Shown: positions 42,273-61,743, counted from the first letter of the whole stretch. The stretch: DNA of 61,743 nucleotides, filler included, from Platydemus manokwari (GCA_037951405.1; 5 parts of 5 records of this genome joined end to end with filler, not necessarily neighbours in it), one strand, 5' to 3'. A program made the numbers and translations. The notes: a model not told the origin generated them from the letters alone.

Positions 42273-43972
42273 ATTTGATATTTGTAAAATATTATGATGA
42301 GGATCGAACGATAAAATATGCAAAACCATATCCAGCACATTTATATAATCACGAAATAAAGTGATTTATTTTCGAAATGTTTCTTTTCCTCTTCTTCATT
42401 TACGACTTTTTAATGGATTTATATATTTTAAAATCATATTTTCATTCGTGATAAAATTTCGTTATAACTTGTATCGAAATACAAACATCATGTTGCCAGT
42501 ATTAAAAATGTACCAGTTTATGAATCTGTCAATGAAACTGTGAGAAGAGATCAATTCTGGACTTTATCAAACATTTTATAGACTGCAGTTCTTTCAATTT
42601 TTTTGAAAATTTGATGGGGATTTTCATTGGTTTAAAAAATTCAACGAGTAAATTGATTTTTATCTTTTTAAAAGCGTAACATTTGATTTAATATTCTTCA
42701 CATTCCATTTAATCAAACCAAAATAAAGTTACATACTCTTTAGTAAAGGAATTTCCAAATTATTTTAGGCCTAATACCGGTGAAATATTGATTGATACAA
42801 GATATATTTTGATTCGTGTATTTTTTATGAAATAATTGATTGATTTGTTCATCGTGTTTTATCCAACTGGGTTTAAATTGTAATTCGATATAGACTTACA
42901 CGCATACACACACGTATATATGCATGTATGTGTGTAATTTTGCAGGAAATTGTGATCGATATGATTTAAATATATCCATCAATGTTTGAGAATAGTTGAC
43001 ATAATTTGTTTTATTCTCTTTCTGGAATAGAAAGCTTGAAAAATTGATAACTCTCTGCTTTGAAGTAGTGCAATATTTTACTCGCTTAATTAATGATTAT
43101 CGAAGGATTAGTGAGGAGGCAATATTTTTCTGTGATACACGATTTTCAGTAAGAGAACTGAATTTGTAGAAGCCAGTTTTTGAAATCATTTTTAAAATTG
43201 CCTTCACTGTAAGCGATCTACATACAATACATTCGCTAATTGGATCATAATGAATAGCTCGATAATTAGGTCATCTCCAATTAAATAGATCCAGTTTAAT
43301 GCTAATCAATAATAATGAAATAAATTATCTCCAATAAAAACAAGTTAAAGAAATTAAAAATATTCATGATTATAAAATCTCTGTTAACCATACAAAATTT
43401 TACATGTCGGGTAGGTTATTTAAATGTGGGCATCCAAATATTTGTGGAATTATATATTTTTAAAATTTAAATATTTTTTTTTTATATTTCAAATTTCTAC
43501 TAGGTTTTCCAAACTTGTCAAGTTTCATTAAAAGATATAAAAGATGTATTTATATCATTTTTAATTTTTTATACCCACGTAATAAAAAATAAATTCGAAA
43601 AATACTTTTTTCTTTAGTGGATAAAAGATTTTGTTATTTTTTAAAATTTACTTGTTCTGACGTTCTGTTTTTTTTGTTAATTTCGTCATTTAAATGACAT
43701 TACGGTTTGAATCGATTTTTAAAATATTTGATGTTCTTTACCAATTGAAAGAGAAATAAAACAAGAAAGGCTGACGGTTTTTTATTACGGCCTCTACACA
43801 AACTAGCTAAAATCGCTCATTTGAATGCCGTTTATGAAAAATTCTATGATTCGTTTATACATTACGGATATACATAAAATTAGACATGGCTCTTTGTTAA
43901 ACACGCGAGAAACTGTTGACAATAATTGATTGCAAATACTTTATAATTAATCAATATATATATTTTATTTAG

Positions 43973-44276
43973 AGAGTTTGCTATTGGTTTCGAATTAGAG
44001 TCAGTGGATCAGTATAATACCAGCAATCCCAATAATTTCAAAAAGAAATTATCTGGGGATTATCGGTAATAGAATTATTGATTTTTATGCTTGGATAATT
44101 TCACGTTGATAATTTCATTTTCTCGATTCAGCCGAGGATTTGTTGTTTCAGAATTCAATAATATGTCAGGAGGTATTTATAATATCAGAGTTTCCACTTA
44201 TTCTCCCAACCAAGAAGGTCCATTCATATTGAAAATTGGATCGATCAGGGACCTCAGTCTTTACCAACTAACATAA
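43973..44276 (+). CDS. CAPN7: Calpain-7 (PalB-like), last two exons 43973-44065 and 44132-44276
   Basis: EFAIGFELESVDQYNTSNPNNFKKKLSGDYR|RGFVVSEFNNMSGGIYNIRVSTYSPNQEGPFILKIGSIRDLSLYQLT* matches the calpain-7 C-terminal domain (YSVGFE..SGDYRxGF..GIxNI.PSTF.P.QEGPF.L); 66-nt GT-AG intron keeps frame. Upstream exons not recognised in this contig. Confidence 0.88.
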
Positions 44277-45364
44277 ATCAAACGTTTATTTTATCATTCA
44301 AACTTTGAATAACGATAATAAAATGTCTTGTTATTATCTTCTATTATTTTCTGAAATATTTTGGATGTGGTATTAAAATTTCAAAGGATATCGATTTATT
44401 GAAAATGAGGTGAATTTATTGTATTAGATAGTAATTGGAATAACATTAGCGAGCGTTGTCGTAACATTATAAAAATGTTTTGTATTATGTCAAACTGATA
44501 TCCAAATGCATGAGGTTCGTGAGAGGTGAATATCATTTATTTATATTGGAAAGTTCTAAACGATATTATTCAAGCCACAAAGCATAAATACACAATAACT
44601 CGGAATTAATTTCATTCTTGTCATTACATTTCAGATACAATTATTCAACGTGAACGATATACAGATTTCAAAACTTGATAACCGATTACCGTTATTCAAA
44701 ATCACAAGCGGTTTTTTTAAATTGTGAATATTTTTTATTAATTCTTGAGCTTTTGAAATTCATTTTAAGGAATAAAATTTTTGTTGAGTTTAATAAGAAG
44801 AAAGATTTTTTATTATTCCAGATTATATTGTTAATGCATAATAAAATCTCTATCTATAAACGCTACTTAATTTCTGAGACAATTTAGATTTTTTATGAGA
44901 TTTATTATATCACATCGTTAACCCAGGATATCTTAATTAATAAATGGATTGAAAGAAATATTATCGACAAATTATTCTAGATAAATATCAATTACTTATC
45001 GACAAAACAATAAACCTAATCGTTAATATTAATGCGAAATATGCTATTAGATATACAATCCATAAGGGTTTAAACATACATCAATAATAAGTATTATATA
45101 GACACAACAAATAAAATACGATAAGATACATAATATATAAGATTATGAAATCAATAAAATGTGGGCGTAAAAATTTTTTGAATAACATTTTAAAATCAGA
45201 AATTATTAATTCGAGGGAAACCCGTTGTGATGATTTCATAAAAACCATAGATTTTAAAAATAAAATTCATATCACCGTGGCAACATGGTAAATTATCACA
45301 ACGAAAGTAAAATATCACAAAAATGAATCATCACGCCCACAAAATTCAATTATATATAAACCAG

Positions 45365-45900
45365 CATCACAAATCAGTGATTGCACAAAATGTTCTCGCT
45401 ACAAATCGCATACGTTCACATAAGCACATAGAATTATAAGATCATAGAATTATTTTCCGATATTTCAGACGGGATTTGCAATCCAACAAGCATTCGCAAG
45501 CAGAATCATTCCGTCATTATTTCGTACTTGCATTCAATAAATTTATTCAATTCAATTCACACTTCAATTTTATACCGAAACATGGCAACCATTATTATTA
45601 TCATTGTTAGACTATTTGCATCAATCTCTGACAGGAGACGTGTTGTGAAATAATAACTACGTTGATCCTTCAAATTCTATTAGAATTTGCTGGGACAATT
45701 AAATCAAAGCTCCAATTCTTGTTTCATATCACAGAAGAATGTCATTAGTTATATCCAGGGATTATTGGTCTCTTCAGGATACATTATCCCATCTGTCGAT
45801 TTTAAAGCATTTCACATTTGTTTATCATTATTATGTTCAATAAAGACTTTTATATCAGTTGTCTTATTTTGATCATAGTAGTTTGCAACTTATTAAAACT
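45365..45900 (-). pseudogene. Heavily decayed frame, possibly a piggyBac transposase 3' remnant
   Basis: Minus-strand frame with scattered stops (..FIEHNNDKQM*NALKSTDGIMYPEETNNPWI*LMTFFCDM..) followed by a Cys-rich end (CLCER/AICSE/REH); loosely piggyBac-like, by eye only. Confidence 0.2.
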
Positions 45901-46108
45901 GTTAGATGACAGATCTTTGATGGAATCATTAACTATCTGTTCTAACTTATATCATTAACTTAAGGACTAAATGATCGATAAATTATTGTTGATTCATTCA
46001 TATACATGTCATGTCGCAAATTCCATAATTATAATAATTATCAAAATATATAACAATAAAGAGAAATTTCATGAAAAAATTTATTAATAAAATATGATAT
46101 CTAGTTAT

Positions 46109-49100
46109 TCAGTGTTTACTATCGATATAAAATTCAACAGAAATATTATCAGGTAATTCTGAAGGTAACTGGTTAATTTTTCTGTCTTTAGGCAATGGTT
46201 TTGGAATATTGGGAACTGGTATGTACTTCTTATTGACAGTGGTCGATTTTGTAAACTGCTTGCTTATTAAGTCATTGATTCTAGAAACAGTAATTCCATT
46301 AATTGGTTTTCCACTTTTCTTTATCATCTTGTTAGATTCGTATCCACCTCGACGATCTTCTTTTTGTTTTTTACACACTGAACCATTTCGTTGAGATTTC
46401 GATGTACTAACACTTGAAGTAGGACTTGATAACAGTAGCGACTCAGGAATTAACTGACGGGGAATTTCAAAACGATCGCAACGATAATTGGAAAATTTCG
46501 ATTCTAAAGCCTTCATCACAGCTATAAAATACGGTGGTGAAACCATCGCACCAATTAATTTACGCCCATCATGGAGTTCTATCCGGCTTATAAGACATTT
46601 TCTGATGACAGAACCTATTGATTTAAAAGCAGAAAAAACAGCCCCAGTTATAAGATAACTTGTTTTTGTTCGTTGACCGTAAGAACAAAATCGTTTCGGA
46701 CAGTTTTCATTGCAAATATTATGCAGGCAACGTAATCTACTCTCGTCATATACATACTCCCAATCTTTTTTAATATCACATGCTTCACTTTTTTCCCACA
46801 TTGATTCGAAAGATTCTTTGCTTATAGTCTTTTCCGGAAAATTCGGAGTAATTAATACCAACTCATTCGACGACTTGTAAATTGCCAGTGCCAAAAACAG
46901 ATTTTCAAAATTTTTCGATACGCAAAAGAGATTATTGTTCGTGTCAGCAGAATATATTTTAAATGCTTTTTCCCACGACACTCCATCTTCGACATTAATG
47001 ATCTTATGAATCTTGATTATTTCTTCATCGTTTGTGGAAGCTTCATTGAAAATAACCGTTTCTTCTACATATACAGTATCTTGTTCATTGACAACATCTC
47101 TGATTCCATAATCGAATTCGTTTCGAGCTTTGGCTTTCTGTGATTCATTTTCTATTATGTCAAGAAAATATTGGAATAAAGCATTCTGCATATCAATATC
47201 AATCCCAAGGATTCTATTCAAAAATTTCGTTACGGTCATATGTTTAGTTTCGTGCAAACCAACATTCTTTAAGGTTTGCTGAGCGATACTACGAAAAGTT
47301 ACGTTATTATTTCCATATAAATGTAGATACCCAGTAGGAAATGGAACAGTAGGAGACTCGCTCCTATTAATAGACTGAATCAAATGATAAATAGCTTTTA
47401 ATCCTAATTCGTTATCAAAGTTAAATTGAGCAAAGTCTTTATTGTTCGCACATCTTCTATCACCATGGGTTAAGGCTCCCAAACACTCTAAACGTTTGGC
47501 AATTGTCGAAGCAAATCTTCGTTCACCTGCTAAATCCGATATGAGAAATACGTAATGAGGAGAAATGACTTGATTAGAACGATGAGTACGTCCAAATTGT
47601 TGAACTGCTTTATCTGCAGACCATGGTAATTCAAGGGTAATATGAAATCTTTGACGATTGTTTTTAAACCTCTTATCAGAGTGAAGAGAAATGCCTGTAC
47701 TAGCAGCATCGGATATAATAGCAATAGGCTTTTCACCATTATTGAATCTGTCTTTTTCCATTAAATTTATTTGATCAATAGCGACATCAGCTTCTTTTCT
47801 TGGTTGATATGAAATACAACCTTTATTTTCCAATATTCTGCCTTTACGACCCGTCATTTCTGCAACCATGTTTGGGCCTCCTAATTCATGAATCAGTTGA
47901 TCCAATGCATTAAAAGGAAACATGCTGTCAATATCCTCAATTGTTTTTAACATGTTTTGCTTAATCTGATTATCTAAAGACGAATTTTCATTTTTGATTC
48001 TCACAGATTGAGGAATGTATGCACTATTATCTTCATTGATAAATATAACATCATCGTCTACATCATTCTCAGTTATGTATGACATCACTGACTCCCTAGT
48101 ATTACTCTTGTTAAAACTTTCGAAATATTCTTCTAATTCTGTGTCGCTTTCAGTTTTCTGTTTCTGATCTCTTAATTTCTGATTTTTTCTTAATTTCGAT
48201 TTTTCTCTATTTTTTACAAGATTTTGAACACTCGGATAATGGTTTTCTATGAGATTTTTAATAACTCCTTTTGCGCTTGAAACAAAATCAAATATATCCC
48301 TCGTGGATTCTTCTAATATGTCCAAAGTTTGTGCTTCACCAGTCGACTGTAGACCAATCACAACACATTTATCTCCCTCCTTAATTTTTGATTGAACAAT
48401 TTTCACGCACTGTTGAATTTTGCCTGCAATGCATAGGTATTTAAAAAATCTCTGATGCGCTGACCAAAATTGAGCTTCGAAAATATTTTCATCTTTTTCG
48501 GTAGACTTATTTCTTTCAAAAGCCTCTTTGAAGCATTTATATATTGAATTCCACACCTCGACACATTTGTTGTAAACATCTTTAAATTTATGACCGTTTA
48601 TAGATGAATTAGAGATTGGTAAGTTTAGAATTTCAAACTCAACACCTTGAAAACTGAGTTGCCGAGCTAAATAAATCCCTTTAGTTTTCATTTCTATAGC
48701 AATAAGTTCCATCGCTCCGACACCTAACGATGTCAACGTGCTCTCAAAATCCTCAAATTCCGAAAATCTCTTACCAGGCCCCCACAATCCCAATCTCACC
48801 ATATATGCCATATGTTTCGGCTCCGATGCTCCAGTAGCACTGGCATACACCACACGGGCAAATCTCAGTCGTTCTTGCAACTTTTTCACAATAGCACCAG
48901 TTTTGGTTTTGTTGTTTTGATGCAGATTTTTCGCTTTATGACATTCATCAAATACAATCACTCCATCATAATCTTCTCCAAACCAATCAATTATTTGATC
49001 CAATCGTTTTTTAAATATATAACCATCTTCTTTCTTACTTTTACTAATTAATGATGAATAAGAAACAAATAAAACCCCTTCATTAAAATGACCATTTTCA

Positions 49101-50011
49101 TTGCTATCGATCTGATTGTAGGTCATTTTATTCAAAGCTGCTACTTTAATGTGAGTTTTAATCGGTTTGCCAATATCGCCCAAATCCCGTTCAGCATCTT
49201 GTTTCAAATCACTCGACACCGATATCCAGATGGATTTCTTTCGACCATGTAAATGATTCTCTAAAATAATGCCTCCAATTGTTCGACCTTTACCAACACC
49301 AGCTCCATCGCCGATGAGAAATCCCAATCGTTTATCGTCGTAAAAATCTTCATCGTGCTTTTGACACGCATAAACAACGGCTTCAAGTTGAACATTGGAC
49401 AGAATTCCTTTGTCGATGATCTTTTTTGGTAGTTTCAATTTATACGTTATATCTGGAACTTCGGCACTTACCAAAGATCTTGATTCAACTACCATGTATG
49501 GATGTGGTTTACCGATTTTTAGTTTGGCTGGTTCATAATTCCTGTATGCCTCATTATGTATCAATTCAGCAAATTCTCTATTTTCAAAACCATAATCTCT
49601 ACTAGAAGTTTGCTTAAAAAAGCTTGACGGTTTATGTTGCTGGAATTTATTGATCGATGGTATATTGAATTCGGTTTTCATTTTTTTAGAATTTAAATGT
49701 TTCCTTCTTATTAAATCAGTCGATTGCCTTTTTCTAGATGGTATCGTAGTCATGATTTCAATAATTTGTTGATCTACAGCAACTGCTTTTGCACTAATAT
49801 CAGGATTTTTTTCCAAAATTTTATTTAAATCCATTATAGATAAATAAACATTGGAAACATTAATATTCGTTACTGATGTTGGCGTAGGAATATCATTTAA
49901 GCCATCCATTGATAAATAACCGTTGGAAATATTTTGATCCAAAACTGACATTGTCGGAGTAGTATCGTTGACATCAGATTTTATTGTCGTGAGATCATCA
50001 AATAAATCCAT
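46109..50011 (-). CDS. SBNO: Strawberry notch homologue, paralog A (1300 aa, single exon)
   Basis: Uninterrupted ORF, ATG at 50011. SBNO family motifs: HPxxVVES, QLEAVVYACQKH, Walker A GFLIGDGAGVGKGRT, Walker B FDECHKAKN, YASATGASEP, QFWSAHQRFFKYLCIA, VIGLQSTGEA, VAEMTGRKGR, GISLHSD, ITLELPWSADKAVQQFGRTHRSNQ, FLNRILG. Confidence 0.97.
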   Translation of the reverse strand: MDLFDDLTTIKSDVNDTTPTMSVLDQNISNGYLSMDGLNDIPTPTSVTNINVSNVYLSIMDLNKILEKNPDISAKAVAVDQQIIEIMTTIPSRKRQSTDLIRRKHLNSKKMKTEFNIPSINKFQQHKPSSFFKQTSSRDYGFENREFAELIHNEAYRNYEPAKLKIGKPHPYMVVESRSLVSAEVPDITYKLKLPKKIIDKGILSNVQLEAVVYACQKHDEDFYDDKRLGFLIGDGAGVGKGRTIGGIILENHLHGRKKSIWISVSSDLKQDAERDLGDIGKPIKTHIKVAALNKMTYNQIDSNENGHFNEGVLFVSYSSLISKSKKEDGYIFKKRLDQIIDWFGEDYDGVIVFDECHKAKNLHQNNKTKTGAIVKKLQERLRFARVVYASATGASEPKHMAYMVRLGLWGPGKRFSEFEDFESTLTSLGVGAMELIAIEMKTKGIYLARQLSFQGVEFEILNLPISNSSINGHKFKDVYNKCVEVWNSIYKCFKEAFERNKSTEKDENIFEAQFWSAHQRFFKYLCIAGKIQQCVKIVQSKIKEGDKCVVIGLQSTGEAQTLDILEESTRDIFDFVSSAKGVIKNLIENHYPSVQNLVKNREKSKLRKNQKLRDQKQKTESDTELEEYFESFNKSNTRESVMSYITENDVDDDVIFINEDNSAYIPQSVRIKNENSSLDNQIKQNMLKTIEDIDSMFPFNALDQLIHELGGPNMVAEMTGRKGRILENKGCISYQPRKEADVAIDQINLMEKDRFNNGEKPIAIISDAASTGISLHSDKRFKNNRQRFHITLELPWSADKAVQQFGRTHRSNQVISPHYVFLISDLAGERRFASTIAKRLECLGALTHGDRRCANNKDFAQFNFDNELGLKAIYHLIQSINRSESPTVPFPTGYLHLYGNNNVTFRSIAQQTLKNVGLHETKHMTVTKFLNRILGIDIDMQNALFQYFLDIIENESQKAKARNEFDYGIRDVVNEQDTVYVEETVIFNEASTNDEEIIKIHKIINVEDGVSWEKAFKIYSADTNNNLFCVSKNFENLFLALAIYKSSNELVLITPNFPEKTISKESFESMWEKSEACDIKKDWEYVYDESRLRCLHNICNENCPKRFCSYGQRTKTSYLITGAVFSAFKSIGSVIRKCLISRIELHDGRKLIGAMVSPPYFIAVMKALESKFSNYRCDRFEIPRQLIPESLLLSSPTSSVSTSKSQRNGSVCKKQKEDRRGGYESNKMIKKSGKPINGITVSRINDLISKQFTKSTTVNKKYIPVPNIPKPLPKDRKINQLPSELPDNISVEFYIDSKH

Positions 50012-51676
50012 AATTAATTTTCATAAATATTGTTACTAAAACGAATTATTTATTTTTAATTAAAAATATCCAAAACATAACCCGTTAAAAATATTAAAAA
50101 TTAATTAATTTTTTATAAGGTTTTATATATTATTTTTTAAAAATTTGTAATTTAATTTTTTAACGTTTGTTTTTTAAAATTAATTGAATATATTAATATT
50201 AGTACCATATTATAAATTGAAAAATATTTTTATAATTATTCACTGATATTTTTTATTATTTTTTAATCAAATTTTATAAAATAAAACAATTTCACAAATA
50301 TTTTTGCTAGTATGGTATCATAAGTATTATCAAATCAATTAGAATCTTATTTCCAATATATCAATATTTCAATTCAACTCTTTTATCAAGATTCTATCAT
50401 GATTCTTCATGATTTTGTGATTAATTTTAGTATCATATAATTAAATTTTATTGAAACTAAAGATTTTTAATATAAGGATCTATCATTTCGTAAATTAATG
50501 TCGATTAAGTTGGCTCAATTTCTCAACATTTTTTATCTGTTCTCTCACAAAAACATTTAAGTTTAAAAGTTATTACTACTGATTTACATTGAAAATTGAT
50601 CACTACTAATTTAATTAAATACGTAATTTTAATTAATGAAAAATGAAAATGCTTCTAATTTCCACGTTAAAATTAATTAAATTATATTACTGATTTTCAA
50701 AAGTATAATTTTTTCATCAAATTTTTTATATTATAAAGATATTTTCAAATATTAACTTTAAACTTTTTATTTTAAATTTTATTTAAAATGAATTTCAATT
50801 TTTTAATTTGACTTGTTTTCAGTTATAATTTCTATTATATGATTTAATTTTATTTGTTTTACTTTATTGTGGTTCAGTGAATTCTATTTAAAGTGTAAAA
50901 TAAATTTTATTTTAATTTCGCGATTCATTTGTATTTGTGTAGGTGTGGAAGATTTTTAATTTATTTTCAGTAAATGGTAAATTTAAAAAAAATCGCTTAA
51001 TAGTTTTCAAAATATAATTTCATTAATGTTGCAATTTATATTTTTAAAGTGCATAAATCTTCATTAATTAGTTTACGTCTTATATTAAATAATTAATTAA
51101 TTAGAGTGTGTAATATATTCTCATTCAAGATATCTATTTTATATCTATCCATATGAAAATCTTGTAACTGTTGTAGGGATTCAAATTTACTGTTAAATGT
51201 TTTCTCATAATTAGAGTTGAATGAAATGATGTCGGGCTTTTAATTATCATTAACTCCGACGAATAAAAGGTCATTTATCGGGAAATTATATTACTTATGT
51301 TTTCTGTTCGCACTTCTGTGAATTTTTTTTACAAAAATCATATCTTTTGTAATATATGTGCTTTCATCACAACGTTTTTCTAAGCAAAAATATTAAAATG
51401 TTGTGAAATGGTAAATTTTTCTTGAACAGTTTTTATCGTGTTCAATGTGCGGTATTATATAATGTTTTCGTCTTGCTTCAAAAATCCATTTTGAGGTCAG
51501 AAGCATTGCATTCTACGAAATATATTAATGGAATTTTATTTGTGCCCAACTTGATAATAGCAAAGAACAAATCAACAATAATTTATTGATAAATTATTCC
51601 TTAAATTAATATGAAAAGTTCATATTTTATGATTCAAACAAAGATCTGATATGATACGTGTCACAATATTAACGGG

Positions 51677-51698
51677 ATAATAATAATAATAATAATAA
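51677..51698. repeat. (ATA)n microsatellite
   Basis: ATAATAATAATAATAATAATAA read directly. Confidence 0.8.
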
Positions 51699-54514
51699 CA
51701 AAATTACAATAATAATATTTATAAAATATAATAAGAATTAACTAAAGCATAGTGTTGAAGTTAGGTACAGTAGATGTAGTGCCCTGAATATGGGTAGCAA
51801 TGGCTGGGGAGACTGATGGTAATCTACCTCTAAATAGAAGGTAATTTTAAAATCCCAACAAATTCAGTAGAGCTTTGAATGAGGTTCATAAGTAATAATT
51901 CATTACTAATCCATATCGGAGATTGATGTGAATAGAATAATACGAGATATAAAAATTGAATTTACCATATTGAGCATATAATGCGATTGAAATTGATCAA
52001 TAATGTTTATCTTGCGAATAGACACTTGATTAATGTACTATTTTCCTGCTCGCGAAGTGTTGTTTACGAATATGAAAATTTCTGAGTCAGCTAACGTTGT
52101 ATATGAATCGAGAATTATTTGTGCGCATTTCTGTTAAACTGGGTTGTTTATATAATGTTTACATTCTCGCCAGAATGACTAATTTTCCATATTTTTAATC
52201 TGTATTATGGTAGAGCCGTCAGAGCTAGTGATTTATTTTTTGTTTCAAAAATTAATTATCAAACCAGAATTAAAATTTCATCTGATTCGATAAAATCCAT
52301 TAAAAAATTTTTTACGATGGTCAATTTTAAAATCGTATTGTTATTTTCTTGTTTCTAGTACTTTATGTAGTGGAATTCTATTTCATGATTCTAATAGATT
52401 TAAATCAACAAGATATTCCCGATGATTCGAACCGCTAATAATTTATAAGTAGTCAGTAGCTGAAAATTAATATTTTCAACAATGGACAATATAAAACTTT
52501 TATTGATTATAATAATAATTAACAAACAAAGCAATACCGCGACCCCGAGAATGGAAAATCGACATAGGGTACTACATGGCGCCATACTTTGATGTAAAAA
52601 CTAAAGAAGTACGTGATTTTTAACACCAACAAATTATAATATGACCTTGGAGAGAATACCATTAATATTTCTGAACTAATCTCCTGTAGAGGATTAATGA
52701 GAATAAACTGATAATAATATTATTAATAGTTACCATTGTAGTAAAATTTTAATTAATATAGATTCCAATATGAATGGATTTAGATGTTAGCTGAATAATG
52801 GATAACCTGGCCTAAATTGAAACAGATTCTAACTGAGTTACAATCAAAATTAATACTAATATATTCCAAATGCGTGAATTAAAATTGAGGGAATCCGAGT
52901 GACGTCAATTGTGATGAGAAATTTTGTGCAAATGAATTTTGATTGCTTCTACTCTTATACTGTTTCAGTTTGTGGGTGTTTACAGGACTTATTACTCATT
53001 TTACATTTTCTATAGCAATTCTCTAAGTTGCCGTAGTAATTTCAGATTTAAATTCGGATTACTATGCTTACATCTACCATTTCCATGACAACACATATTA
53101 ATCATGGTTACTAATTTATTTTCCCGAAACTTTAAAAACAATGTATTTTATATTTACCAATTTTTTTTAATGATTACTTAAAATTATATGTATTTTATTT
53201 ATGATTATAATATAATGTAATTGTGTATATTATACGATACCTATATGTATATCCAACCAATGTGTAATGACAACCTCAAGTAAAAGTGGCATAAAATTAT
53301 CATCAAGGAAGTTGATTGACTACTCATAGCTACAGGACATCTTCTAGAAATAGTTTTAACAACAGCGTCTCGTTACATTTGACGCTTGCATTCTTCTGCA
53401 AAAAATAACAATCGAAGAAATACATGTTATTGTACGACTGATCTATCGCACATATAATCACTGTTGTATTTTCAACAAACCTTAGTTTATTCCATTTTAT
53501 TGATTTATATCGCAACCAATAATTTAAAAGGAATAAGTTTACTGTTGATGCAATCCAACATCGCAATAAATAGAACTCGTGACTAACAACAGATGTAAAC
53601 CCCCATCATAATATTGATTTCACTTATATTATTAATAAATTCCATTGATGAAGAATAAACCTTTCAATAATAATTAATGAAAGAAAGTAAATTCCAACAT
53701 AATTAGAATAAATGAAATATGAACGAGATTTTTAAGCGTTTATCAAAAATTCACTTATTTTTATTCTGAAGTATCTTTTCATGTGACCAGATAGGCCAGC
53801 AGTGTGGTCCAAAATATTATAGGATGAAATAATTATTTTAAGCAACCGTTAGAGAGTTAAGTTTATAAAATACAATTTCGGTTTTTCATATGTTAGCATA
53901 AATAAAAGTACTGGTACTTCAGAACAGGCATCACAATAATTATTGCATCAACATTACTTAACGGTAAAATCTGGCATATTACAGCATTTCATTGGGTTAA
54001 AAAATTATTATTTATCTGTGATGAATTGCATTTGACTATGTGATCAATAACTTTAGATTAAGCCGAATTACAATTATCCGTCAATAATAAATATTATTAT
54101 TTCTGATTTCTAAAGATGATAAATATTTAAAGATATTTTTTCATTATAATTAATATAAAATTATAAATCATATAAAAATCACCGTACTTGATAACTGCCT
54201 ACACGTAGTCAAGAGTAGTCAGGGAGTGTCTAATAAAACATTTTTATTGTAATATCACTACTAAATTTGTTTTTATGATATACCTTGAAATTATTATTAA
54301 TTTTGTTTCTCATTCCAATTTATATATTCAACCACGATATTCGATTATGTTGATTCAATAATAGGACTCGTCGATTAATATATGTTATTCAAAAAAAAGC
54401 TCGACCATCCATCGATATGATTCAAAAGGAAATCTTTGAAGAGCGAGTCCCAAATTAAAAGAAAATAATTTATTCATCGAAAAATTTCCCATAAAAAGAT
54501 AAAAATATTATACA

Positions 54515-57500
54515 TTATAAATCTTCTTCCGATATAAAATTGACAATCAAATTCGGAAATTGATAACCCTTATAATTTTGATTGTTAGCCTCTATTTTTC
54601 TTTCTGTTTTGGTAATATTTTTTTTATCATTCGTCCCTTTCACATCTTTTGATGCAATGATTTGGTTTGATTTATTCGTTGATTTCGTTAATTGAGCTCT
54701 AACAATATCATTGATTCTCGAATAATCCAATTGAACTGAATTCACGATTTTCTTCGATTTTTTCTTTGAACCCGAGCTTGGTTCAGATTTGATTTTACCA
54801 GATGATTCCAACTCCTCCGTTGGCAATTCTTCCTTCGATTCTGGCATTTGTTCCATTGGAATGTGTTGTATGGTTGGAACACTATAACCCATCTCTAAAG
54901 CATTCATCACAACTTTATGATATGGTCCCGGTACCAGTGCTCCAATCAGTTTCGTTTTGTCAAATAATTGCACTCGAATTATTTCCAATTTCCTATTAAT
55001 ATGTGCTTTGTCAATCTTTTTCAATGCCAACAATACAGCTCCAGTAATGAGATAATTTATCTTCGTCCTTTTCCCATCCGTACAATTTCTGTGAGCACAT
55101 TTCGTTTTGAATATCTGATGAATACATTTGGTTTTGCTTTCTCCATAAATGAACTGCCAATCATTTTGAATCATTTTCGGTTCCGTTTTGTCCCACACCG
55201 TTTTTAACAAAACTCCATCGATTTCCTTTGTCGGATAATTTGGTCTCATCAGTGAATAAAACCCATTATCATTATATTCAGCAAAAGCCAATAATTGAAT
55301 CTTATTATCTTTCGTTGATTTCGATGTGTAGAAATGATTGGTTCTCGTATTGATCTGATATCGATCCATAACTGATTCCCACGAACTACCGGTAGTGTTT
55401 TCGATTTTATTCACCACTATATCATCATTATCATATCTGGAATCCGTTTTGAATGTATGTGATTCCATCACATAAACATTATCATGATCATTCATTAAAT
55501 CTCTGATGCCATGATCAAACTCATTACGACATTTTGCTTTTTGCGATTCGTATTCGATAATATCGAGAAAATATTGAAACAACGCATTTTGCATATCTAG
55601 TGCCATACCAAGAATTCTATTCAAGAATTTCGTCACGCTTAAAAATTTAATTTTATTCAATCCAACACTGGCCAATGCATCTTGAGCACATTGTCTGAAT
55701 GTTTGGATATCATTGTGATATAATTTCATATATTGTTCCGGGAAAGGAACAACACCAGTTTCTTTATTAATTAATGAATTAATCAAATTGTGAAGTGCTT
55801 TCAAACCAATCTCATTATCTAAATTAAACTGGCTCAAATTCCGTGAATTATCACACCTTCTATCACCATGGGTTAAAGCTCCAAGTGATTCCAATCTCTT
55901 AGCAACCGTTGCTGCGAAACGTCGCTCACCAGCTAAATCGGATATCAGAAACACATAATGCGGACTGTTAACTTGATTCGAACGATGAGTACGACCGAAT
56001 TGTTGGATTGCTTTATCAGCTGACCATGGCAGTTCAAGAGTGATATGGAATCGTTTCCTTTTGTTTGCAAATCTTTTATCGGAATGCAACGATATACCAG
56101 TACTGGCAGCATCGGAAATTATCGAATAAAGCTTTTCTCCACTGTTAAATAAATCCTTTTCAATGATATTGGTTTGATCAACGCTATGATCTTCTAATTT
56201 TCTCTGTTGAAATGAAATGATTCCATTCTTTTCAACCATTCTACCCTTACGCCCAGTCATTTCAGCCACTTTATCAGGACCGCCCAACCCAAAAATCAAT
56301 TGATCTAAAGCATTCAATGGAAACATGCTGTCAATTTCTTCCACAGATTTCAACATTCTCTGTTCACCATCATCATCTATTGAAAATTTTCCATCATATC
56401 TCGGTGTTGAACTGTTACTATGGCAACCGTTTGTGGTTAAAATTGGAGAATTCGAATAATTGTCTTCACTATCAATATCACCATTGGAATCTTTAGATTT
56501 CATATGTTTCAAACTCCTTTTGGCTTTGTTTTTTTCCATATTTTTCACGCTCGGATAATGATTCTTGATGAGATTTTCCACGACACCTTTGGCTGTCGAT
56601 ACAAAATTATCACAACTCCCACTCGTCTCATCCAATGCATCCATGGTTCGTGCTTCACCGGTCGATTGCATGCCAATCACCACACAATTCCCATTGACAT
56701 TCACTTCATGTTTCGATATCCGAACACATTCTTCCACTTTACCAGCAATGCAGAGATATTTGAAGAATCGCTGATGCGCCGACCAAAACTGTGCCTCGAA
56801 ATTGGTTTCATCTTTCTCATCCAATCGATTCCGTTCGAATGCATCATTGAATTCCTTGTAGATATTATTCCACACTTCAACACATTTATTGTAGACATCT
56901 TTAAACCGATGACCATTGATGGTGGAATCTTCGATTTGGATTTGTTTGATTTCACAATGGACATTCTGAAAGCTCAATTGTCGTGCCAGATAAACGCCAT
57001 TCTTTTTCATTTCTATGGCAATCAATTCCATCGCTCCGACACCCAACGATGTCAGCGTGCTCTCAAAATCCTCAAATTCCGAAAATCTCTTCCCCGGTCC
57101 CCACAATCCCAATCTCACCATATATGCCATATGTTTCGGTTCCGATGCTCCAGTAGCACTGGCATACACCACACGGGCAAATCGCAATCGCTGTTGCAAC
57201 TTTTTCACGACGGCACCAGTTTTGGTTTTGTTGTTTTGATGCAGATTTTTCGCTTTATGGCATTCATCAAATACAATCACTCCATCATAATCCTCACCAA
57301 ACCAATCAATCATTTGATCCAATCGTTTCTTGAATCGATAAACACCACCACCACCACCACCGCTACCCCCATCACCACCCTCACCAGCATCTTTTTTGCT
57401 TTTACTTATCAATGATGAATAAGAAACAAATAAAACCCCTTCATTAAAATGACCATTTTCATTGCTATCGATCTGATTGTAGGTCATTTTATTCAAAGCT

Positions 57501-58654
57501 GCTACTTTAATGTGAGTTTTAATCGGTTTGCCAATATCGCCCAAATCCCGTTCAGCATCTTGTTTCAAATCACTCGACACCGATATCCAGATGGATTTCT
57601 TTCGACCATGCAAATGATTCTCTAAAATAATGCCCGCAATCGTTCGACCTTTACCAACACCGGCTCCATCGCCGATGAGAAATCCCAATCGTTTGTCGTC
57701 GAAAAAATCCTCATCGTGTTTCTGGCACGCATAAACGACGGCTTCCAGTTGAACGTTGGACAGAATGCCTTTGTTGATGATGATCGATGGTAATTTGAGT
57801 TGATATGTGATATCGGGTGCATTGGTGCTGCTCAATGAACGTGATTCGACCACCGTGTACGGATGGGGTTTGCCTTTTTTGAATTTAACGGGCTCATAAT
57901 TGGAATAGGCTTCGCTGTGAGTGAATTCGGCAAAATCCAGACCATCATGGTCGTAATCTTTCGGTAAATTAGATGGACTGTTATTTTGAGTGAAATCAAA
58001 TATGTCGAATTGATTTGTTGATTCGATTTTTGTTGGCTCATATGAATCGAATATGTCGATGGTGGTATTGTTATTTACTGGATTGGATTTTGATTCGGAT
58101 TTCGAAGAAGATGGAGAAATTTTGATTTTTTTCGAATCGGTGTTTGGATTGGTTTGTTGAAGAGATGAGTCGGGAAGTTTCTTTTTTGGGATCGATGTAT
58201 TTTTGATTGGTTTGACGAAGTTTGCTTCCGAAGAATTTGTATTAGACGGAGAAATGGTTTTAGGTTTAGTGGAAACGGTTGGCATAATAAATCCAAAATT
58301 GGAACTGTTTGATAAATGAACCGGAGTATGTGAAATGGCTACCAGAGGACTATCCATCGTTCTAGAAAGAGAAACAATACCAGATCTTATAATTGGTGTT
58401 GTACCGGATGTTGTATTATTTGCACTAAAACCGGACTGAAGATCTCGAGGAGTTTTCGGTTGGAAAGTACCATTTTTAAGACTTTGAGTGTTCTTCATCT
58501 CATTTATTTGTTGCGATAATGTTCCGAATTTTAGAATTTTGGCATTAGAATCATCAGATTTTTTTTCTGTTATGGGTCGTTTCAAAAGCGATCTGGACTT
58601 ATTTTGTTCATCTTTTTCTCCTTTAATTGTTGAGAAATTATTTAAAAAATCCAT
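54515..58654 (-). CDS. SBNO: Strawberry notch homologue, paralog B (1379 aa, single exon)
   Basis: Uninterrupted ORF. The track's first M (58657) is a TTG; the ATG is at 58654 (MDFLNNFSTIK, compare paralog A MDLFDDLTTIK). Same complete SBNO motif set as paralog A, with a longer S/T/P/N/K-rich N-terminus and a Gly-rich insertion. Confidence 0.97.
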   Translation of the reverse strand: MDFLNNFSTIKGEKDEQNKSRSLLKRPITEKKSDDSNAKILKFGTLSQQINEMKNTQSLKNGTFQPKTPRDLQSGFSANNTTSGTTPIIRSGIVSLSRTMDSPLVAISHTPVHLSNSSNFGFIMPTVSTKPKTISPSNTNSSEANFVKPIKNTSIPKKKLPDSSLQQTNPNTDSKKIKISPSSSKSESKSNPVNNNTTIDIFDSYEPTKIESTNQFDIFDFTQNNSPSNLPKDYDHDGLDFAEFTHSEAYSNYEPVKFKKGKPHPYTVVESRSLSSTNAPDITYQLKLPSIIINKGILSNVQLEAVVYACQKHDEDFFDDKRLGFLIGDGAGVGKGRTIAGIILENHLHGRKKSIWISVSSDLKQDAERDLGDIGKPIKTHIKVAALNKMTYNQIDSNENGHFNEGVLFVSYSSLISKSKKDAGEGGDGGSGGGGGGVYRFKKRLDQMIDWFGEDYDGVIVFDECHKAKNLHQNNKTKTGAVVKKLQQRLRFARVVYASATGASEPKHMAYMVRLGLWGPGKRFSEFEDFESTLTSLGVGAMELIAIEMKKNGVYLARQLSFQNVHCEIKQIQIEDSTINGHRFKDVYNKCVEVWNNIYKEFNDAFERNRLDEKDETNFEAQFWSAHQRFFKYLCIAGKVEECVRISKHEVNVNGNCVVIGMQSTGEARTMDALDETSGSCDNFVSTAKGVVENLIKNHYPSVKNMEKNKAKRSLKHMKSKDSNGDIDSEDNYSNSPILTTNGCHSNSSTPRYDGKFSIDDDGEQRMLKSVEEIDSMFPLNALDQLIFGLGGPDKVAEMTGRKGRMVEKNGIISFQQRKLEDHSVDQTNIIEKDLFNSGEKLYSIISDAASTGISLHSDKRFANKRKRFHITLELPWSADKAIQQFGRTHRSNQVNSPHYVFLISDLAGERRFAATVAKRLESLGALTHGDRRCDNSRNLSQFNLDNEIGLKALHNLINSLINKETGVVPFPEQYMKLYHNDIQTFRQCAQDALASVGLNKIKFLSVTKFLNRILGMALDMQNALFQYFLDIIEYESQKAKCRNEFDHGIRDLMNDHDNVYVMESHTFKTDSRYDNDDIVVNKIENTTGSSWESVMDRYQINTRTNHFYTSKSTKDNKIQLLAFAEYNDNGFYSLMRPNYPTKEIDGVLLKTVWDKTEPKMIQNDWQFIYGESKTKCIHQIFKTKCAHRNCTDGKRTKINYLITGAVLLALKKIDKAHINRKLEIIRVQLFDKTKLIGALVPGPYHKVVMNALEMGYSVPTIQHIPMEQMPESKEELPTEELESSGKIKSEPSSGSKKKSKKIVNSVQLDYSRINDIVRAQLTKSTNKSNQIIASKDVKGTNDKKNITKTERKIEANNQNYKGYQFPNLIVNFISEEDL
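57344..57390 (-). repeat. Coding (GGT)n-type trinucleotide repeat in SBNO paralog B
   Basis: (ACC)6 plus degenerate units on the + strand; encodes AGEGGDGGSGGGGGG. Confidence 0.9.
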
Positions 58655-61600
58655 CAATCTATGATGACAATGTGTATTTAAAAAAAATAATTTTATTTAT
58701 ATAATAACATCTTACTGTTAAAGAAATAAAATAAAATAGAACTAGTTAGAAAGTTGCTTTGTGAATTTTAATTAAATTTGATTAACTACACCGCTCTAAT
58801 GCATGTTAGTCAAGATTATTCAAACAAATTAAATAAATATATTAATATTATAACTTAATATACTAAATTCTTATTAAAATGTATTTAGCTTATTTGTTTA
58901 TTATATTTATTTCGATAAATATGATTCCTTCGATGAATTTGAAATGAGATTAAAAATAATCTATCATAATTATTGCATTACCTTTATTTAGAATTATGTT
59001 AGAGAAAAAGAAATATATTTTCAAAAATTGACTAGTCTTAAATAAATTTCAACATCCTAATATTTATTTAATCTGATTAGTATTTGTTTTGATAAAAATT
59101 ATAGTTATTATTAATACTTTGATGTAAATACAAACTTTAAAACCATAATGTAAACATAACATGTACCAATGTTACAAATGTAAAAATATCCTCCGCGACA
59201 CTTGTTATTATAACATCAGCAAACTCGAAACCGCCATTATATGCAGATTCTAGCAGCGTTGGGTGTAATTATTTTTATTATTGAGATATTTTGTTGACTT
59301 AATCAATGTTTTAATTTATTCTGTCAGCTATTTTGAGCTATTTTAAGTTTCTTTAGTCTAAGGTAAGTTAAAAAATGCTTTTATGTGATTTCTAAGACTT
59401 GTTTTACTTTGTTTATGACTCAAGTGGTTATGGAAAGGAAAATTAATTTTAGTAAGGAAATTGAGTACCATTTCATTCGATAGCTGCACAATAGGTATGC
59501 ATGAAAAAGAAAAAATAAAATGAATTTTACTATCATAAATTAACGACAGATGTTCAAATTTAACTGTGTTACTCAGAGGTGTCACTGTGTGATAGCCAAA
59601 TAATTTTGTTCTATCTTTGTTTATTTATGAAATCCATTTTTCACTTAATAATTCAATTTACTAAGCTGTAATATCGTATTTTTTGTGAATCATTATCTTT
59701 TAAAGTTTCGAAGTATTATTGTTATTATTTACAATATAATTTTTATCTCCTTTGTATGGGATCAATCAGAATATACCGAAATCATCTGAATTTGTTATTA
59801 AAAATTTTGATGAATGAAATATAATTACATAGTTGTAATATTTCATCAGATCTTGATGCAGTTTGCCACATTATCAAAGAAAAAAAATATAAATTTAATA
59901 AAAAAAATCCCACAAGAATCTTAATTATAGCCAACATCAAATTAAACCCAATGATTTTCATTCGTTTCTTGTAAATAAATTTATTTATTTTATCAAAAAT
60001 TCTCTTTCGAGAAAGTTATATTGGATTGTTTAAGCTGGGATTTTCAGAAAAAAATAATGTTGGCTATTTATTTGACGAATTCCTTTATCTAAATATAAGA
60101 TCTGATCTGTATAGCCATGAAAAGTTTATGTTAAAAAGAATGAAAGATATTTATGAACCTGAAGTACAATAATAATGTCAAATGTGTAAAATTCATAATA
60201 TAACAACAATTTACATTCGAACGTGGTCAATATCACCTAGTTTAATGTCAGTATCGGTATGATTCATTATCTATGAAATATTATTTATTATCATCCTTTA
60301 TTACCATCTTGTTTAATATGATATTCATTTTAATAGAATTGATTATTTTCAAATTAATTGATTTTATTTATTTCTGATTTCTCAATTTAATGAAATTGCT
60401 TTAACTAAATCTACGTTTTTATAAATTGGCTAGACGGTTATTACACTGTTTTTCAATAATTTGAAGTTAAATATGGTCAAAGTCTTTTTATTGAGTTTAT
60501 GTGAATAGAGAAAGACGTGTAGTTTCGAAAACTCTCTTCAGTTCGATGATTGATATGGACGGATTTTTTTAAGGAATCACAAAATACAAATTTTATATTA
60601 AAGAAAAGTATGTCGATTTCCTAATAAAATTGTGAATTCCGTAATTTTTCGAGGTTTTTGAGTAAAAGTTGAATAAAGTAATATTAAAGGAAGTGCTCTA
60701 ACGGGGAGAAAGTGAGATTCATAAATTTACAATTTTCAATTGACTAATATCAGAATTTGATTAAATCATTTATATTACAATTTTTTCTGGTTTTTAATTT
60801 ATTCATATTTTACCAAAATAACCCTTATACTGTTTTATTGGACTTTGAATTCTATATATTTATGTTCTAGTTATTATTCATGTGCGAATCCAATATTGAT
60901 TAATTGGAACAATAGTGCTAAGTGTGAAGCAAAACTAAAACATGATATTTAAGGAAAACATTCCAAAAGTTCGATCCATAGAGACTAGATGAGCACACGT
61001 TCCAATAGCTAATCAGATGTCTTCAATGTCACGAAAGTTAGAAGACAACCTACTAACAAACTGGTATGTGGACTGTTTCATATGAACAGACACACCAGGT
61101 CTGTAAAAGAAGTCGAATCTGGAAAGTAAGTACCAATATTTCTTGGTCGGTAATTTTTGTTCAACTTACTGTTTTGCCTGATTATTTTAATGATAAATCA
61201 TTTATGGTCGTTGTTTATTTCAGGTGGCAATCCCGTTCCTAACTGATTTTAACTTTGTTCTTGAGAATGATTTAAAGTGCAAATATTGACAAATTAATTT
61301 TAAATGGCAACTTTGTGATTATAATTAGATTTTTGAATATTTCGAGTCAGTGAAAATCTTGCAATAGGATAAACTTTAAGTGCACTTGTTTATAATTAGA
61401 GTTTCTATTTACTTTTACTTAACAATTTCATTGGTCAATATGCATTCTTGTTTTAAATAAAAATAAGTATATGTAGTGTAGCTTTTGACTAATTTTATTT
61501 GACAGGTTTTAATAAATTGTATGCAGACTTTTTGGAATTAGAGGAGAATAGTGAAGCTTATAATGCAGCAGTATCCTCACAAATAATATGATGATTTGCA

Positions 61601-61743
61601 ACGGTTACCTCTGATAATGAAGAATTATATGTGTAAGAATAAAAAATTTAATTAATAATAATGGTAAAATCTGATATTTTTTAAGGTGGTGTCAAATTTG
61701 GTTGGTTGTCTTCCTTTGGTAATCCTGTTTGATTACCGTTTAA

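What the first reader, a model, noticed from the sequence alone, without database searches (positions are those of the whole stretch)
46109..58654. Tandem pair of full-length, intron-free Strawberry notch helicase-like genes in an intron-rich genome
Seen: two intact 3.9-4.1 kb single-exon ORFs, head-to-tail and 4.5 kb apart on one contig, whereas every other gene here has exons of about 50-520 nt or less. Both keep Walker A, DECH, SAT and motif VI (QxxGRTHR). They share traces of the extreme N- and C-termini, so the whole ORF was duplicated. Established: animal sno/let-765/SBNO1/2 are multi-exon, low-copy nuclear regulators, and SBNO-type SF2 ATPases also occur in prokaryotic and phage mobile elements. 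Inference: a lineage-specific SBNO subfamily arose by retroposition or complete intron loss, duplicated long ago (many silent differences outside the converted tract) and both copies remain constrained. This is the best candidate for an undescribed system in the window; any function (stem-cell, germline or genome-defence role) is speculation.
Basis: partly seen in the sequence, partly recalled or inferred. Interest (0 to 1): 0.8.

Follow-up and report, generated by a model that had tools for sequence, protein, structure and literature searches.

The report
Tandem intronless strawberry-notch gene pair
Two neighbouring, intact, intron-free copies of the conserved animal chromatin ATPase gene strawberry notch (SBNO) arose by an old local duplication and are both still under selection; this is a tidy case of gene-family evolution, not a new kind of system.

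Summary
Two uninterrupted minus-strand ORFs (46109-50011, 1300 aa; 54515-58654, 1379 aa) lie head to tail, 4.5 kb apart.

They are each other's closest relatives: 60% identical outside the converted tract, against 43% or less to any other SBNO. They sit on a long branch inside the animal SBNO clade. Flatworm affinity is favoured but not proven.

Synonymous sites are saturated except in a roughly 640-nt gene-conversion tract over ATPase lobe 1 (dS 0.25; Fisher p 7e-21). Omega is 0.06-0.5, and 214 and 215 of 230 family-conserved residues are kept, so both copies are functional.

Third-position GC matches the flanks, and a neighbouring calpain-like gene has a 66-nt intron. The pair is therefore native, not contamination.

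Retroposition cannot be shown, and a "new subfamily" cannot be told apart from the lineage's ordinary orthologue. Intron poverty is common for this gene: parasitic flatworm SBNOs have exons of 600-1050 codons, and an unidentified animal with split neighbouring genes also has a single-exon SBNO.

Verdict: a new member of a known kind, of modest interest.

The parts
46109..50011 (-). SBNO copy A: single 1300-codon ORF, ATG at 50011-50009, stop at 46109-46111, AATAAA about 25 nt after the stop
54515..58654 (-). SBNO copy B: single 1379-codon ORF counted from the ATG at 58654 (ORF listing starts one codon earlier, at a TTG at 58657), AATAAA about 40 nt after the stop
48596..49507 (-). AAA_34 (SF2 ATPase lobe 1 plus helical insert) of A, with Walker A GAGVGKGR at aa 236, DECH at aa 355 and SAT at aa 391
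56918..57868 (-). AAA_34 of B, with Walker A at aa 330, DECH at aa 463 and SAT at aa 499 (numbering from the ATG)
47096..47911 (-). Helicase_C_4 (ATPase lobe 2) of A, with motif VI QQFGRTHR at aa 804
55499..56314 (-). Helicase_C_4 of B, with motif VI QQFGRTHR at aa 884
46670..46981 (-). SBNO alpha/beta domain of A (20.7 bits, just under the Pfam cut-off of 24)
55067..55384 (-). SBNO alpha/beta domain of B (34.4 bits, above the cut-off)
48728..49366 (-). Gene-conversion tract in A (aa 216-428), from Walker A to beyond motif III. It is 96% aa identical to B, with a 66-codon core in which every codon is identical.
57047..57727 (-). Gene-conversion tract in B (aa 310-536). It contains a B-specific 14-residue Gly-rich insertion, seen as an 18-nt tandem repeat at 57346-57391.
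50012..54514 (.). 4503-nt AT-rich spacer (24.5% GC), which must hold copy A's promoter. It shows no similarity to the other flanks beyond a weak 89-nt match upstream of both ATGs. It includes a high-copy repeat at about 52355-52551.

Best explanation
The two ORFs are native, functional paralogues of the animal strawberry notch (SBNO/sno/let-765) gene in a fast-evolving, AT-rich animal, most likely a flatworm.

An ancestral SBNO gene of this lineage lost all of its coding introns. The route was either stepwise reverse-transcriptase-mediated intron loss, of the kind that has left giant 3' exons in other flatworm SBNO genes, or one retroposition event. The evidence cannot separate the two.

The already intronless gene was then duplicated in tandem at the DNA level. 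One event explains the shared orientation, the adjacency and the shared start and end of the CDS. The duplication is old, because synonymous sites are saturated.

Since then both copies have been held under purifying selection. Their low-complexity N- and C-terminal tails and the inter-lobe linker have diverged freely, which probably gave them different partners or regulation (inferred). Ectopic gene conversion has repeatedly homogenised about 640 nt that encode ATPase lobe 1.

By homology, each protein acts as a nuclear SF2 ATPase with a Swi2/Snf2-like fold. Such proteins are recruited by transcription factors and work with remodellers or histone chaperones to open promoters and enhancers. 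This last step is inferred from SBNO1 and FGT1 studies and was not tested here.
For: - Domains and motifs are complete in both copies.
- 214 (A) and 215 (B) of the 230 columns that are at least 90% conserved in 39 other SBNOs are kept. Nine of the changes are shared by A and B, so they happened on the common stem before the duplication.
- A and B are sisters with 100% support. Outside the tract they are 60% identical, against 43% or less to any other SBNO.
- Both copies nest in the clade that carries the SBNO alpha/beta domain, and full-length identity to vertebrate SBNO1 is 43%.
- Under LG+C20 they join Macrostomum plus Neodermata (SH-aLRT 91). Their N-terminal motif resembles the flatworm MD..F..AL..L..KD start.
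- Overall dN is 0.335 and dS 1.5 or saturated. Within the tract dS is 0.25 and omega 0.06-0.08. The excess of identical synonymous codons in the tract has Fisher p 7e-21.
- The end branches are symmetrical, 0.27 and 0.29.
- GC3 is 27-34%, close to the 25% GC of the flanks.
- An independent short-read contig set covers the ORF ends and the spacer at an even depth of about 13 with no differences.
- The neighbouring calpain-like gene has a 66-nt intron.
- Relatives show partial intron loss. Schistosoma has a 1051-codon last exon, Hymenolepis has exons of 927 and 344 codons, Cichlidogyrus has a last exon of about 600 codons, and Macrostomum has at least 6 coding pieces in 10.2 kb.
- The predicted structure (pLDDT 81, pTM 0.77) is closest to RapA, CSB, ISW1, Chd1, Snf2h and Mot1 (E 1e-10 to 1e-7, target TM up to 0.65).
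- Function of homologues: SBNO1 binds Yap/Tead4, NICD/Rbpj and FACT (PMC5389439). FGT1 binds promoters and SWI/SNF and ISWI remodellers (PMC5040591).
Against: - No transcription evidence exists. The only public run that holds the locus is not RNA.
- The species is unknown. The flatworm placement is not significant, because a tardigrade grouping is not rejected (AU p 0.36), and the plain LG+G4 tree leaves the pair unresolved.
- The stem branch is very long (0.8-1.3 substitutions per site) and the amino-acid composition is skewed. The pair could therefore be a divergent extra lineage whose canonical parent lies elsewhere in the genome, which I could not search.
- UTR introns and trans-splicing cannot be excluded.
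- Nuclear localisation, ATPase activity and partner binding are inferred only.
Confidence: 0.62

Rival explanations
1. One reading: A and B are a retrogene-derived, lineage-specific SBNO subfamily. An intron-bearing canonical SBNO still sits elsewhere in the genome. One processed mRNA copy was inserted here, acquired a promoter, evolved fast, and was then duplicated in tandem.
For: - There is no intron anywhere in about 4 kb of CDS in either copy, while the flatworm relatives examined keep several introns.
- The common stem is very long (0.81 under LG+G4, 1.33 under C20). Nine shared replacements fall at positions conserved in at least 90% of other SBNOs, as expected for relaxed or shifted constraint after retroduplication.
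- Tardigrades show that several divergent SBNO paralogues can coexist in one animal.
Against: - No poly(A) relic or target-site duplication is visible, though neither would survive this divergence.
- No parent or any closer homologue is visible in 5.8 billion and 1.8 billion protein libraries, even when searching for fragments.
- The conserved ancestral N-terminus and full-length architecture fit in-place intron loss equally well.
- The skewed AT-driven composition alone can lengthen the branch.
- Neodermatan SBNOs show that stepwise intron loss is the trend for this gene.
Confidence: 0.3
2. Artefact: the pair is a mis-assembly (haplotypes or collapsed copies joined in tandem) or a contaminant contig from another organism.
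For: Only one public run holds the sequence, and it may be the sample the assembly came from, so there is no independent confirmation. The exact proteins are absent from the protein collection.
Against: - The copies differ at 40% of residues with saturated dS, which is far beyond allelic divergence.
- The spacer and flanks are unique, and short-read contigs tile them at the same depth of about 13 as the ORF ends, with zero differences.
- GC3 of the ORFs matches the very AT-rich flanks.
- The same contig carries an intron-containing calpain-like gene and a repeat present at about 15 times the local depth.
Confidence: 0.03
3. Mobile-element or viral cargo: the SBNO-like ATPases belong to a transposon, a giant-virus insertion or a prokaryote-derived element, not to the host's developmental gene set.
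For: - SBNO-type ATPases occur in phages, giant viruses and bacteria.
- An 85-nt inverted repeat, 76% matched, brackets copy A (45910-45994 and 51570-51648).
Against: - Phylogeny and the eukaryote-type SBNO alpha/beta domain place both copies inside the animal clade.
- The best phage hits are about 21% identical.
- There are no PADLOC hits.
- Read depth over the ORF ends is single-copy.
- No transposase, integrase or viral ORF was seen anywhere in the 19.5-kb piece.
- Copy B has no matching inverted repeat.
Confidence: 0.03

Closest known systems
Animal strawberry notch proteins (Drosophila sno, C. elegans let-765, vertebrate SBNO1 and SBNO2)
   Same: The architecture is the same: AAA_34, Helicase_C_4 and the SBNO alpha/beta domain. 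Walker A, DECH, SAT and QQFGRTHR are all present. Identity is 43% over the full length to vertebrate SBNO1, and both copies nest inside the animal clade.
   Different: The CDS is intron-free and tandemly duplicated. The shared branch is long, with 15-16 replacements at otherwise conserved positions. The tails are N/K/S-rich with no recognisable domains. Vertebrate SBNO1 and SBNO2 are unlinked multi-exon paralogues (my own knowledge).
Flatworm SBNO genes (Macrostomum, Schistosoma, Clonorchis, Hymenolepis, Cichlidogyrus)
   Same: They are the favoured sister group under the site-heterogeneous model (SH-aLRT 91). The N-terminal MD..F.. motif is similar. The genes are already intron-poor, with exons of 600-1050 codons.
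   Different: They keep 5 or more introns in the 5' half, are single genes at the loci examined, and are about 43% identical to A and B. The placement is not statistically secure.
Single-ORF SBNO genes on unidentified contigs: L007/L008 (protein P0141), L001 (P0156), L002 (P0137)
   Same: A full-length SBNO is encoded in one uninterrupted ORF. In L007/L008 the neighbouring genes (prolyl 4-hydroxylase, tubulin-tyrosine ligase) are split into adjacent ORF pieces, so that genome has introns.
   Different: Each is a single copy, the GC content is 39-48%, and identity to A is 40-44%. They do not group with A and B, so the intron loss was independent.
Swi2/Snf2-family dsDNA translocases (RapA, CSB/ERCC6, ISW1/Snf2h, Chd1, Mot1)
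   Same: They are the closest solved folds to the predicted core (Foldseek E 1e-10 to 1e-7, target TM 0.5-0.65). The core has two RecA-like lobes with helical insertions.
   Different: Identity is only about 11%. There is no Pfam SNF2-rel_dom match and no PDB relative by sequence. The C-terminal alpha/beta module is SBNO-specific. This is a functional analogy, not family membership.
Arabidopsis FORGETTER1 (the plant SBNO orthologue)
   Same: It has the same ATPase core family. It gives the best mechanistic precedent: it binds promoters and works with SWI/SNF and ISWI remodellers (PMC5040591).
   Different: The plant proteins carry extra zinc-ribbon/PHD modules that are absent here, and they belong to a different clade.

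Membership tests
SBNO / strawberry notch family (eukaryotic) | N-terminal AAA_34 ATPase domain (PF13872) | tested here: met
   E 2e-122 (A) and 4e-119 (B), covering the full profile
SBNO / strawberry notch family (eukaryotic) | Helicase_C_4 domain (PF13871) | tested here: met
   E 1e-101 (A) and 6e-97 (B), profile positions 1-271 of 271
SBNO / strawberry notch family (eukaryotic) | SBNO alpha/beta domain (PF25373) | tested here: met
   B scores 34.4 bits against a cut-off of 24. A scores 20.7 bits, just below, but aligns over the same columns and folds as a beta-rich module with pLDDT above 80.
SBNO / strawberry notch family (eukaryotic) | Catalytic SF2 motifs I, II (DExH), III and VI intact | tested here: met
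   GAGVGKGR, DECH, SAT and QQFGRTHR in both copies; 214 and 215 of 230 conserved columns kept
SBNO / strawberry notch family (eukaryotic) | Phylogenetic position within the animal SBNO clade | tested here: met
   Inside the clade with 100% support against the outgroup set, though the position within it is unresolved or weakly with flatworms
SBNO / strawberry notch family (eukaryotic) | Nuclear chromatin or transcription cofactor activity, ATP hydrolysis | not testable with these tools
   Only inferred from homologues (PMC5389439, PMC5040591). The basic stretches in the N-terminal tails are read from the sequence.
Processed retrogene | CDS lacks all introns present in the parent or orthologues | tested here: met
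   Uninterrupted ORFs; flatworm orthologues have introns
Processed retrogene | Poly(A) tract relic and flanking target-site duplications | tested here: not met
   None downstream of either stop or around the ORFs. The test has little power at saturated divergence.
Processed retrogene | An intron-bearing parent gene at another locus | not testable with these tools
   The rest of the genome was not available. No closer homologue is in the protein libraries.
Tandem duplicates evolving in concert (ectopic gene conversion) | Same orientation, adjacent, and each other's closest relatives | tested here: met
Tandem duplicates evolving in concert (ectopic gene conversion) | A bounded tract whose synonymous divergence is far below the rest of the gene | tested here: met
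   dS 0.25 against saturated; 25/199 against 189/371 synonymous codon differences, p 7e-21
Swi2/Snf2 remodeller family | SNF2-rel_dom / Helicase_C sequence signatures | tested here: not met
   No Pfam SNF2-rel_dom or Helicase_C hit. Only the fold is similar, at about 11% identity.
Prokaryotic or phage SBNO-like and anti-phage defence ATPases | Match to defence-system profiles or close similarity to phage copies | tested here: not met
   No PADLOC hit. The best phage matches are about 21% identical over half the protein.

The most novel reading that the evidence does not exclude
A and B are not the lineage's housekeeping SBNO. They are a fast-evolving, intronless, retro-derived pair that coexists with a canonical intron-bearing gene. 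They would have split roles (for example germline or stem-cell versus somatic), while gene conversion keeps their ATPase lobe 1 interchangeable. That would be a lineage-specific expansion of a normally single-copy chromatin cofactor, with modular concerted evolution.
Probability: 0.25. Interest if true: 0.4.

Novelty: new member of a known kind. Interest (0 to 1): 0.25.

Why it matters
SBNO is a deeply conserved, usually low-copy transcription and chromatin cofactor whose biochemical mechanism is still poorly understood and which has no solved structure.

A natural pair makes a useful comparative data set. The ATPase lobe 1 is kept almost identical by gene conversion, while the tails, the linker and the C-terminal module diverge. 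That contrast points to which parts carry partner specificity.

The locus also adds a clean example of complete intron loss followed by tandem duplication for a long gene (about 4 kb). It shows that intron poverty is a recurrent property of SBNO genes in several animal lineages.

It does not reveal a new kind of system, and nothing here links the pair to genome defence.

Tried and rejected
- Exact look-up of both proteins found nothing in the collection.
- A full-length homologue search, an exhaustive representative search and a search for fragment-sized hits with the Helicase_C_4 piece found nothing above about 55-63% identity. Neither the species, nor a sister species, nor a second copy could be identified.
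- A metagenome locus scan found no relative.
- Only one public run, not RNA, holds the locus. Expression could not be addressed, and the contigs only confirm the assembly locally.
- Rfam, tRNA and tandem-repeat scans gave nothing relevant.
- Pfam scans of flank ORF pieces gave only a weak Calpain_III hit. The N- and C-terminal tails and the 303-aa antisense ORF have no domains.
- The upstream regions of A and B share only a weak AT-rich 89-nt match (74%), which I do not count as a conserved promoter.
- The first tree build timed out.
- The LG+G4 tree left the pair unresolved among long branches. The AU test could not exclude a tardigrade grouping, so I do not claim the taxon.
- PDB by sequence gave no hit.
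- Literature searches found no report of intronless or duplicated SBNO genes and nothing on SBNO in planarians.
- I ran no complex prediction, because I make no claim that A and B bind each other.


Full report
**Observation.** In the piece 42273-61743 only two long ORFs exist, apart from an antisense ORF discussed under side observations. They are 46109-50011(-), 1300 aa, and 54515-58657(-). The spacer is 4503 nt. No other stop-free stretch in the flanks or spacer exceeds 91 codons, and the surrounding DNA is 24-27% GC, so the ORFs are not chance.

Pfam finds AAA_34, Helicase_C_4 and the SBNO alpha/beta domain in both copies. GAGVGKGR, DECH, SAT and QQFGRTHR are all present. The proteins are 60% identical over 1178 residues. 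They begin with homologous peptides, MDLFDDLTTIK and MDFLNNFSTIK.

**Duplication history.** A sliding comparison of aligned codons and a codon-by-codon map show a bounded tract: A aa 216-428 (48728-49366) and B aa 310-536 (57047-57727). In it the nucleotide sequences are 90-100% identical, with a core of 66 identical codons.
- Among identical residues, 25 of 199 codons differ in the tract, against 189 of 371 in the other conserved domains (Fisher p 7e-21).
- dS is about 0.25 in the tract and saturated elsewhere. Omega is 0.06-0.08 in the tract and 0.2-0.5 where it can be estimated outside. dN is only 0.21-0.28 in the helicase domains.

So this is an old duplication, with purifying selection on both copies and later ectopic gene conversion over ATPase lobe 1 (Walker A to beyond motif III). 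Outside the tract A and B are still 60% identical, against 43% or less to any other SBNO. Their sister relationship is therefore not produced by the conversion.

Self-comparison of the piece shows that similarity ends at the ORF borders, apart from a weak AT-rich match about 170-250 nt upstream of both ATGs.

**Function retained.** Of 230 alignment columns that are at least 90% conserved in 39 other SBNOs, A keeps 214 and B keeps 215. Nine replacements are shared, so they predate the duplication. Terminal branches are equal, 0.27 and 0.29. The tails have no recognisable domains.

A predicted structure of the A core (pLDDT 81, pTM 0.77) is most similar to Swi2/Snf2-type dsDNA translocases: RapA, CSB, ISW1, Chd1, Snf2h and Mot1 (E 1e-10 to 1e-7). 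No SBNO structure is detectable by sequence in the PDB.

Published work fits this picture. SBNO1 binds Yap/Tead4, NICD/Rbpj and FACT (PMC5389439). Plant FGT1 binds promoters and works with SWI/SNF and ISWI remodellers (PMC5040591). The most likely mechanism is therefore an ATP-driven nuclear chromatin cofactor. This part is inference.

**Native or foreign?** GC3 of the ORFs (27% and 34%) is close to the flank composition. Contigs of the only public run that holds the locus tile the ORF ends and the spacer at an even depth of about 13 without differences. A spacer repeat reaches depth 203.

On the + strand of the left flank, two short exons of a calpain-like gene are separated by a 66-nt GT..AG intron that keeps the frame (43972-44065, 44132-44276; my reading, with a weak Calpain_III match at E 0.02). 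The contig is thus an ordinary intron-containing stretch of the host genome. Phage and prokaryotic SBNO-like proteins are very distant (about 21% identity), and no defence profile matches.

**Whose gene is it?** No protein above about 55% identity exists in the 5.8-billion or 1.8-billion-protein libraries, not even among fragments, and the exact proteins are absent. Identity to every animal SBNO is flat at 40-47%.
- With LG+G4 the pair sits on a 0.81-long stem in an unresolved basal polytomy with tardigrade and unnamed sequences.
- With LG+C20 it joins Macrostomum plus Neodermata (SH-aLRT 91).
- A tardigrade grouping is not rejected (AU p 0.36).

The N-terminal motif resembles the flatworm one. 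A flatworm host is my best guess, but it is not established.

**How unusual is the lack of introns?** I mapped several SBNO proteins back onto their own loci.
- Macrostomum has at least 6 coding pieces in 10.2 kb.
- Schistosoma has a 24-kb gene whose last exon holds 1051 codons.
- Hymenolepis has exons of 927 and 344 codons.
- Cichlidogyrus has a last exon of about 600 codons.
- Three unidentified genomes encode SBNO in a single ORF (L001, L002, L007/L008).
- In L007/L008 the neighbouring prolyl-hydroxylase and tubulin-tyrosine-ligase genes are split into adjacent ORF pieces. That genome has introns, yet its SBNO is single-exon.

Complete intron loss here is therefore the end point of a recurrent trend for this gene. 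It is not a singular event, and it does not by itself require retroposition. No poly(A) or target-site relic is visible, but none would be expected after saturation. Since two independent retropositions landing adjacent and in the same orientation are improbable, the intronless state most likely preceded a DNA-level tandem duplication.

**What remains open.** I could not search the rest of the genome. There is no expression evidence. UTR introns or trans-splicing are possible, since AG-terminated pyrimidine tracts lie 30-65 nt upstream of both ATGs.

**Verdict.** This is a real, well-preserved tandem pair of intronless SBNO paralogues with a clear gene-conversion tract. It is a new member of a known family and an instructive but ordinary case of gene-family evolution. 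Interest is about 0.25.

Noticed in passing
window 43972-44276 (+): Probable last two exons of a calpain-like gene: 43972-44065 and 44132-44276, ending in a TAA stop. They are separated by a 66-nt GT..AG intron that preserves the frame. The last exon gives a weak Calpain_III match (E 0.02, profile end). The gene's 5' part runs off the piece. This is the only direct sign of introns in this piece.
   Followed up: partly
window 52355-52551: A stretch of about 200 nt in the spacer has contig depth 203, against about 13 around it in the one public run. It is a high-copy repeat of the host genome, and many contigs break or join here.
   Followed up: no
window 45910-45994 and 51570-51648: An 85-nt inverted repeat (76% matched, blastn E 2e-11) brackets copy A. 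One arm is about 115-200 nt past its stop and the other about 1.6 kb upstream of its ATG. Copy B has no counterpart, and depth there is single-copy. It may be two copies of a small dispersed element. It remains unexplained.
   Followed up: partly
window 56504-57415 (+): A 303-aa ATG ORF lies antisense to copy B, and shorter ones lie antisense to the same part of copy A. It has no Pfam match and falls in the most GC-rich, strongly skewed part of the gene. It is most likely a by-product of codon composition, not a gene.
   Followed up: partly
window 57346-57391: Copy B carries a 14-residue Gly-rich insertion (an 18-nt imperfect tandem repeat) inside the otherwise homogenised conversion tract. 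It arose, or was kept, after the last conversion, or it marks a break in the tract.
   Followed up: no
window 50035-50045 and 58710-58722 (-): Pyrimidine-rich runs ending in AG lie about 30 nt (A) and about 65 nt (B) upstream of the start codons. They could be acceptors for a 5'-UTR intron or a spliced leader. This cannot be tested without RNA data.
   Followed up: no
L007 7369-11124 and L008 7161-10916: Metagenome contigs (39% GC) from an unidentified animal encode a 1251-aa SBNO in one ORF, while the neighbouring prolyl-4-hydroxylase and tubulin-tyrosine-ligase genes are split into adjacent ORF pieces. This is an independent case of a single-exon SBNO in an intron-bearing genome.
   Followed up: partly
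L004 21974-25126; L005 7751-10531; L006 14061-16043: Parasitic flatworm SBNO genes have very large 3' exons: 1051 codons in Schistosoma mekongi, 927 in Hymenolepis diminuta and about 600 in Cichlidogyrus. Their remaining introns are clustered in the 5' part, the pattern expected from reverse-transcriptase-mediated, 3'-biased intron loss.
   Followed up: partly
L001 3986-7579; L002 1754-6604: Two further unidentified compact, gene-dense eukaryotic contigs (40% and 48% GC) carry single-ORF SBNO genes of 1197 and 1616 aa. These branch near the base of the animal-type clade. The organisms are unknown.
   Followed up: no
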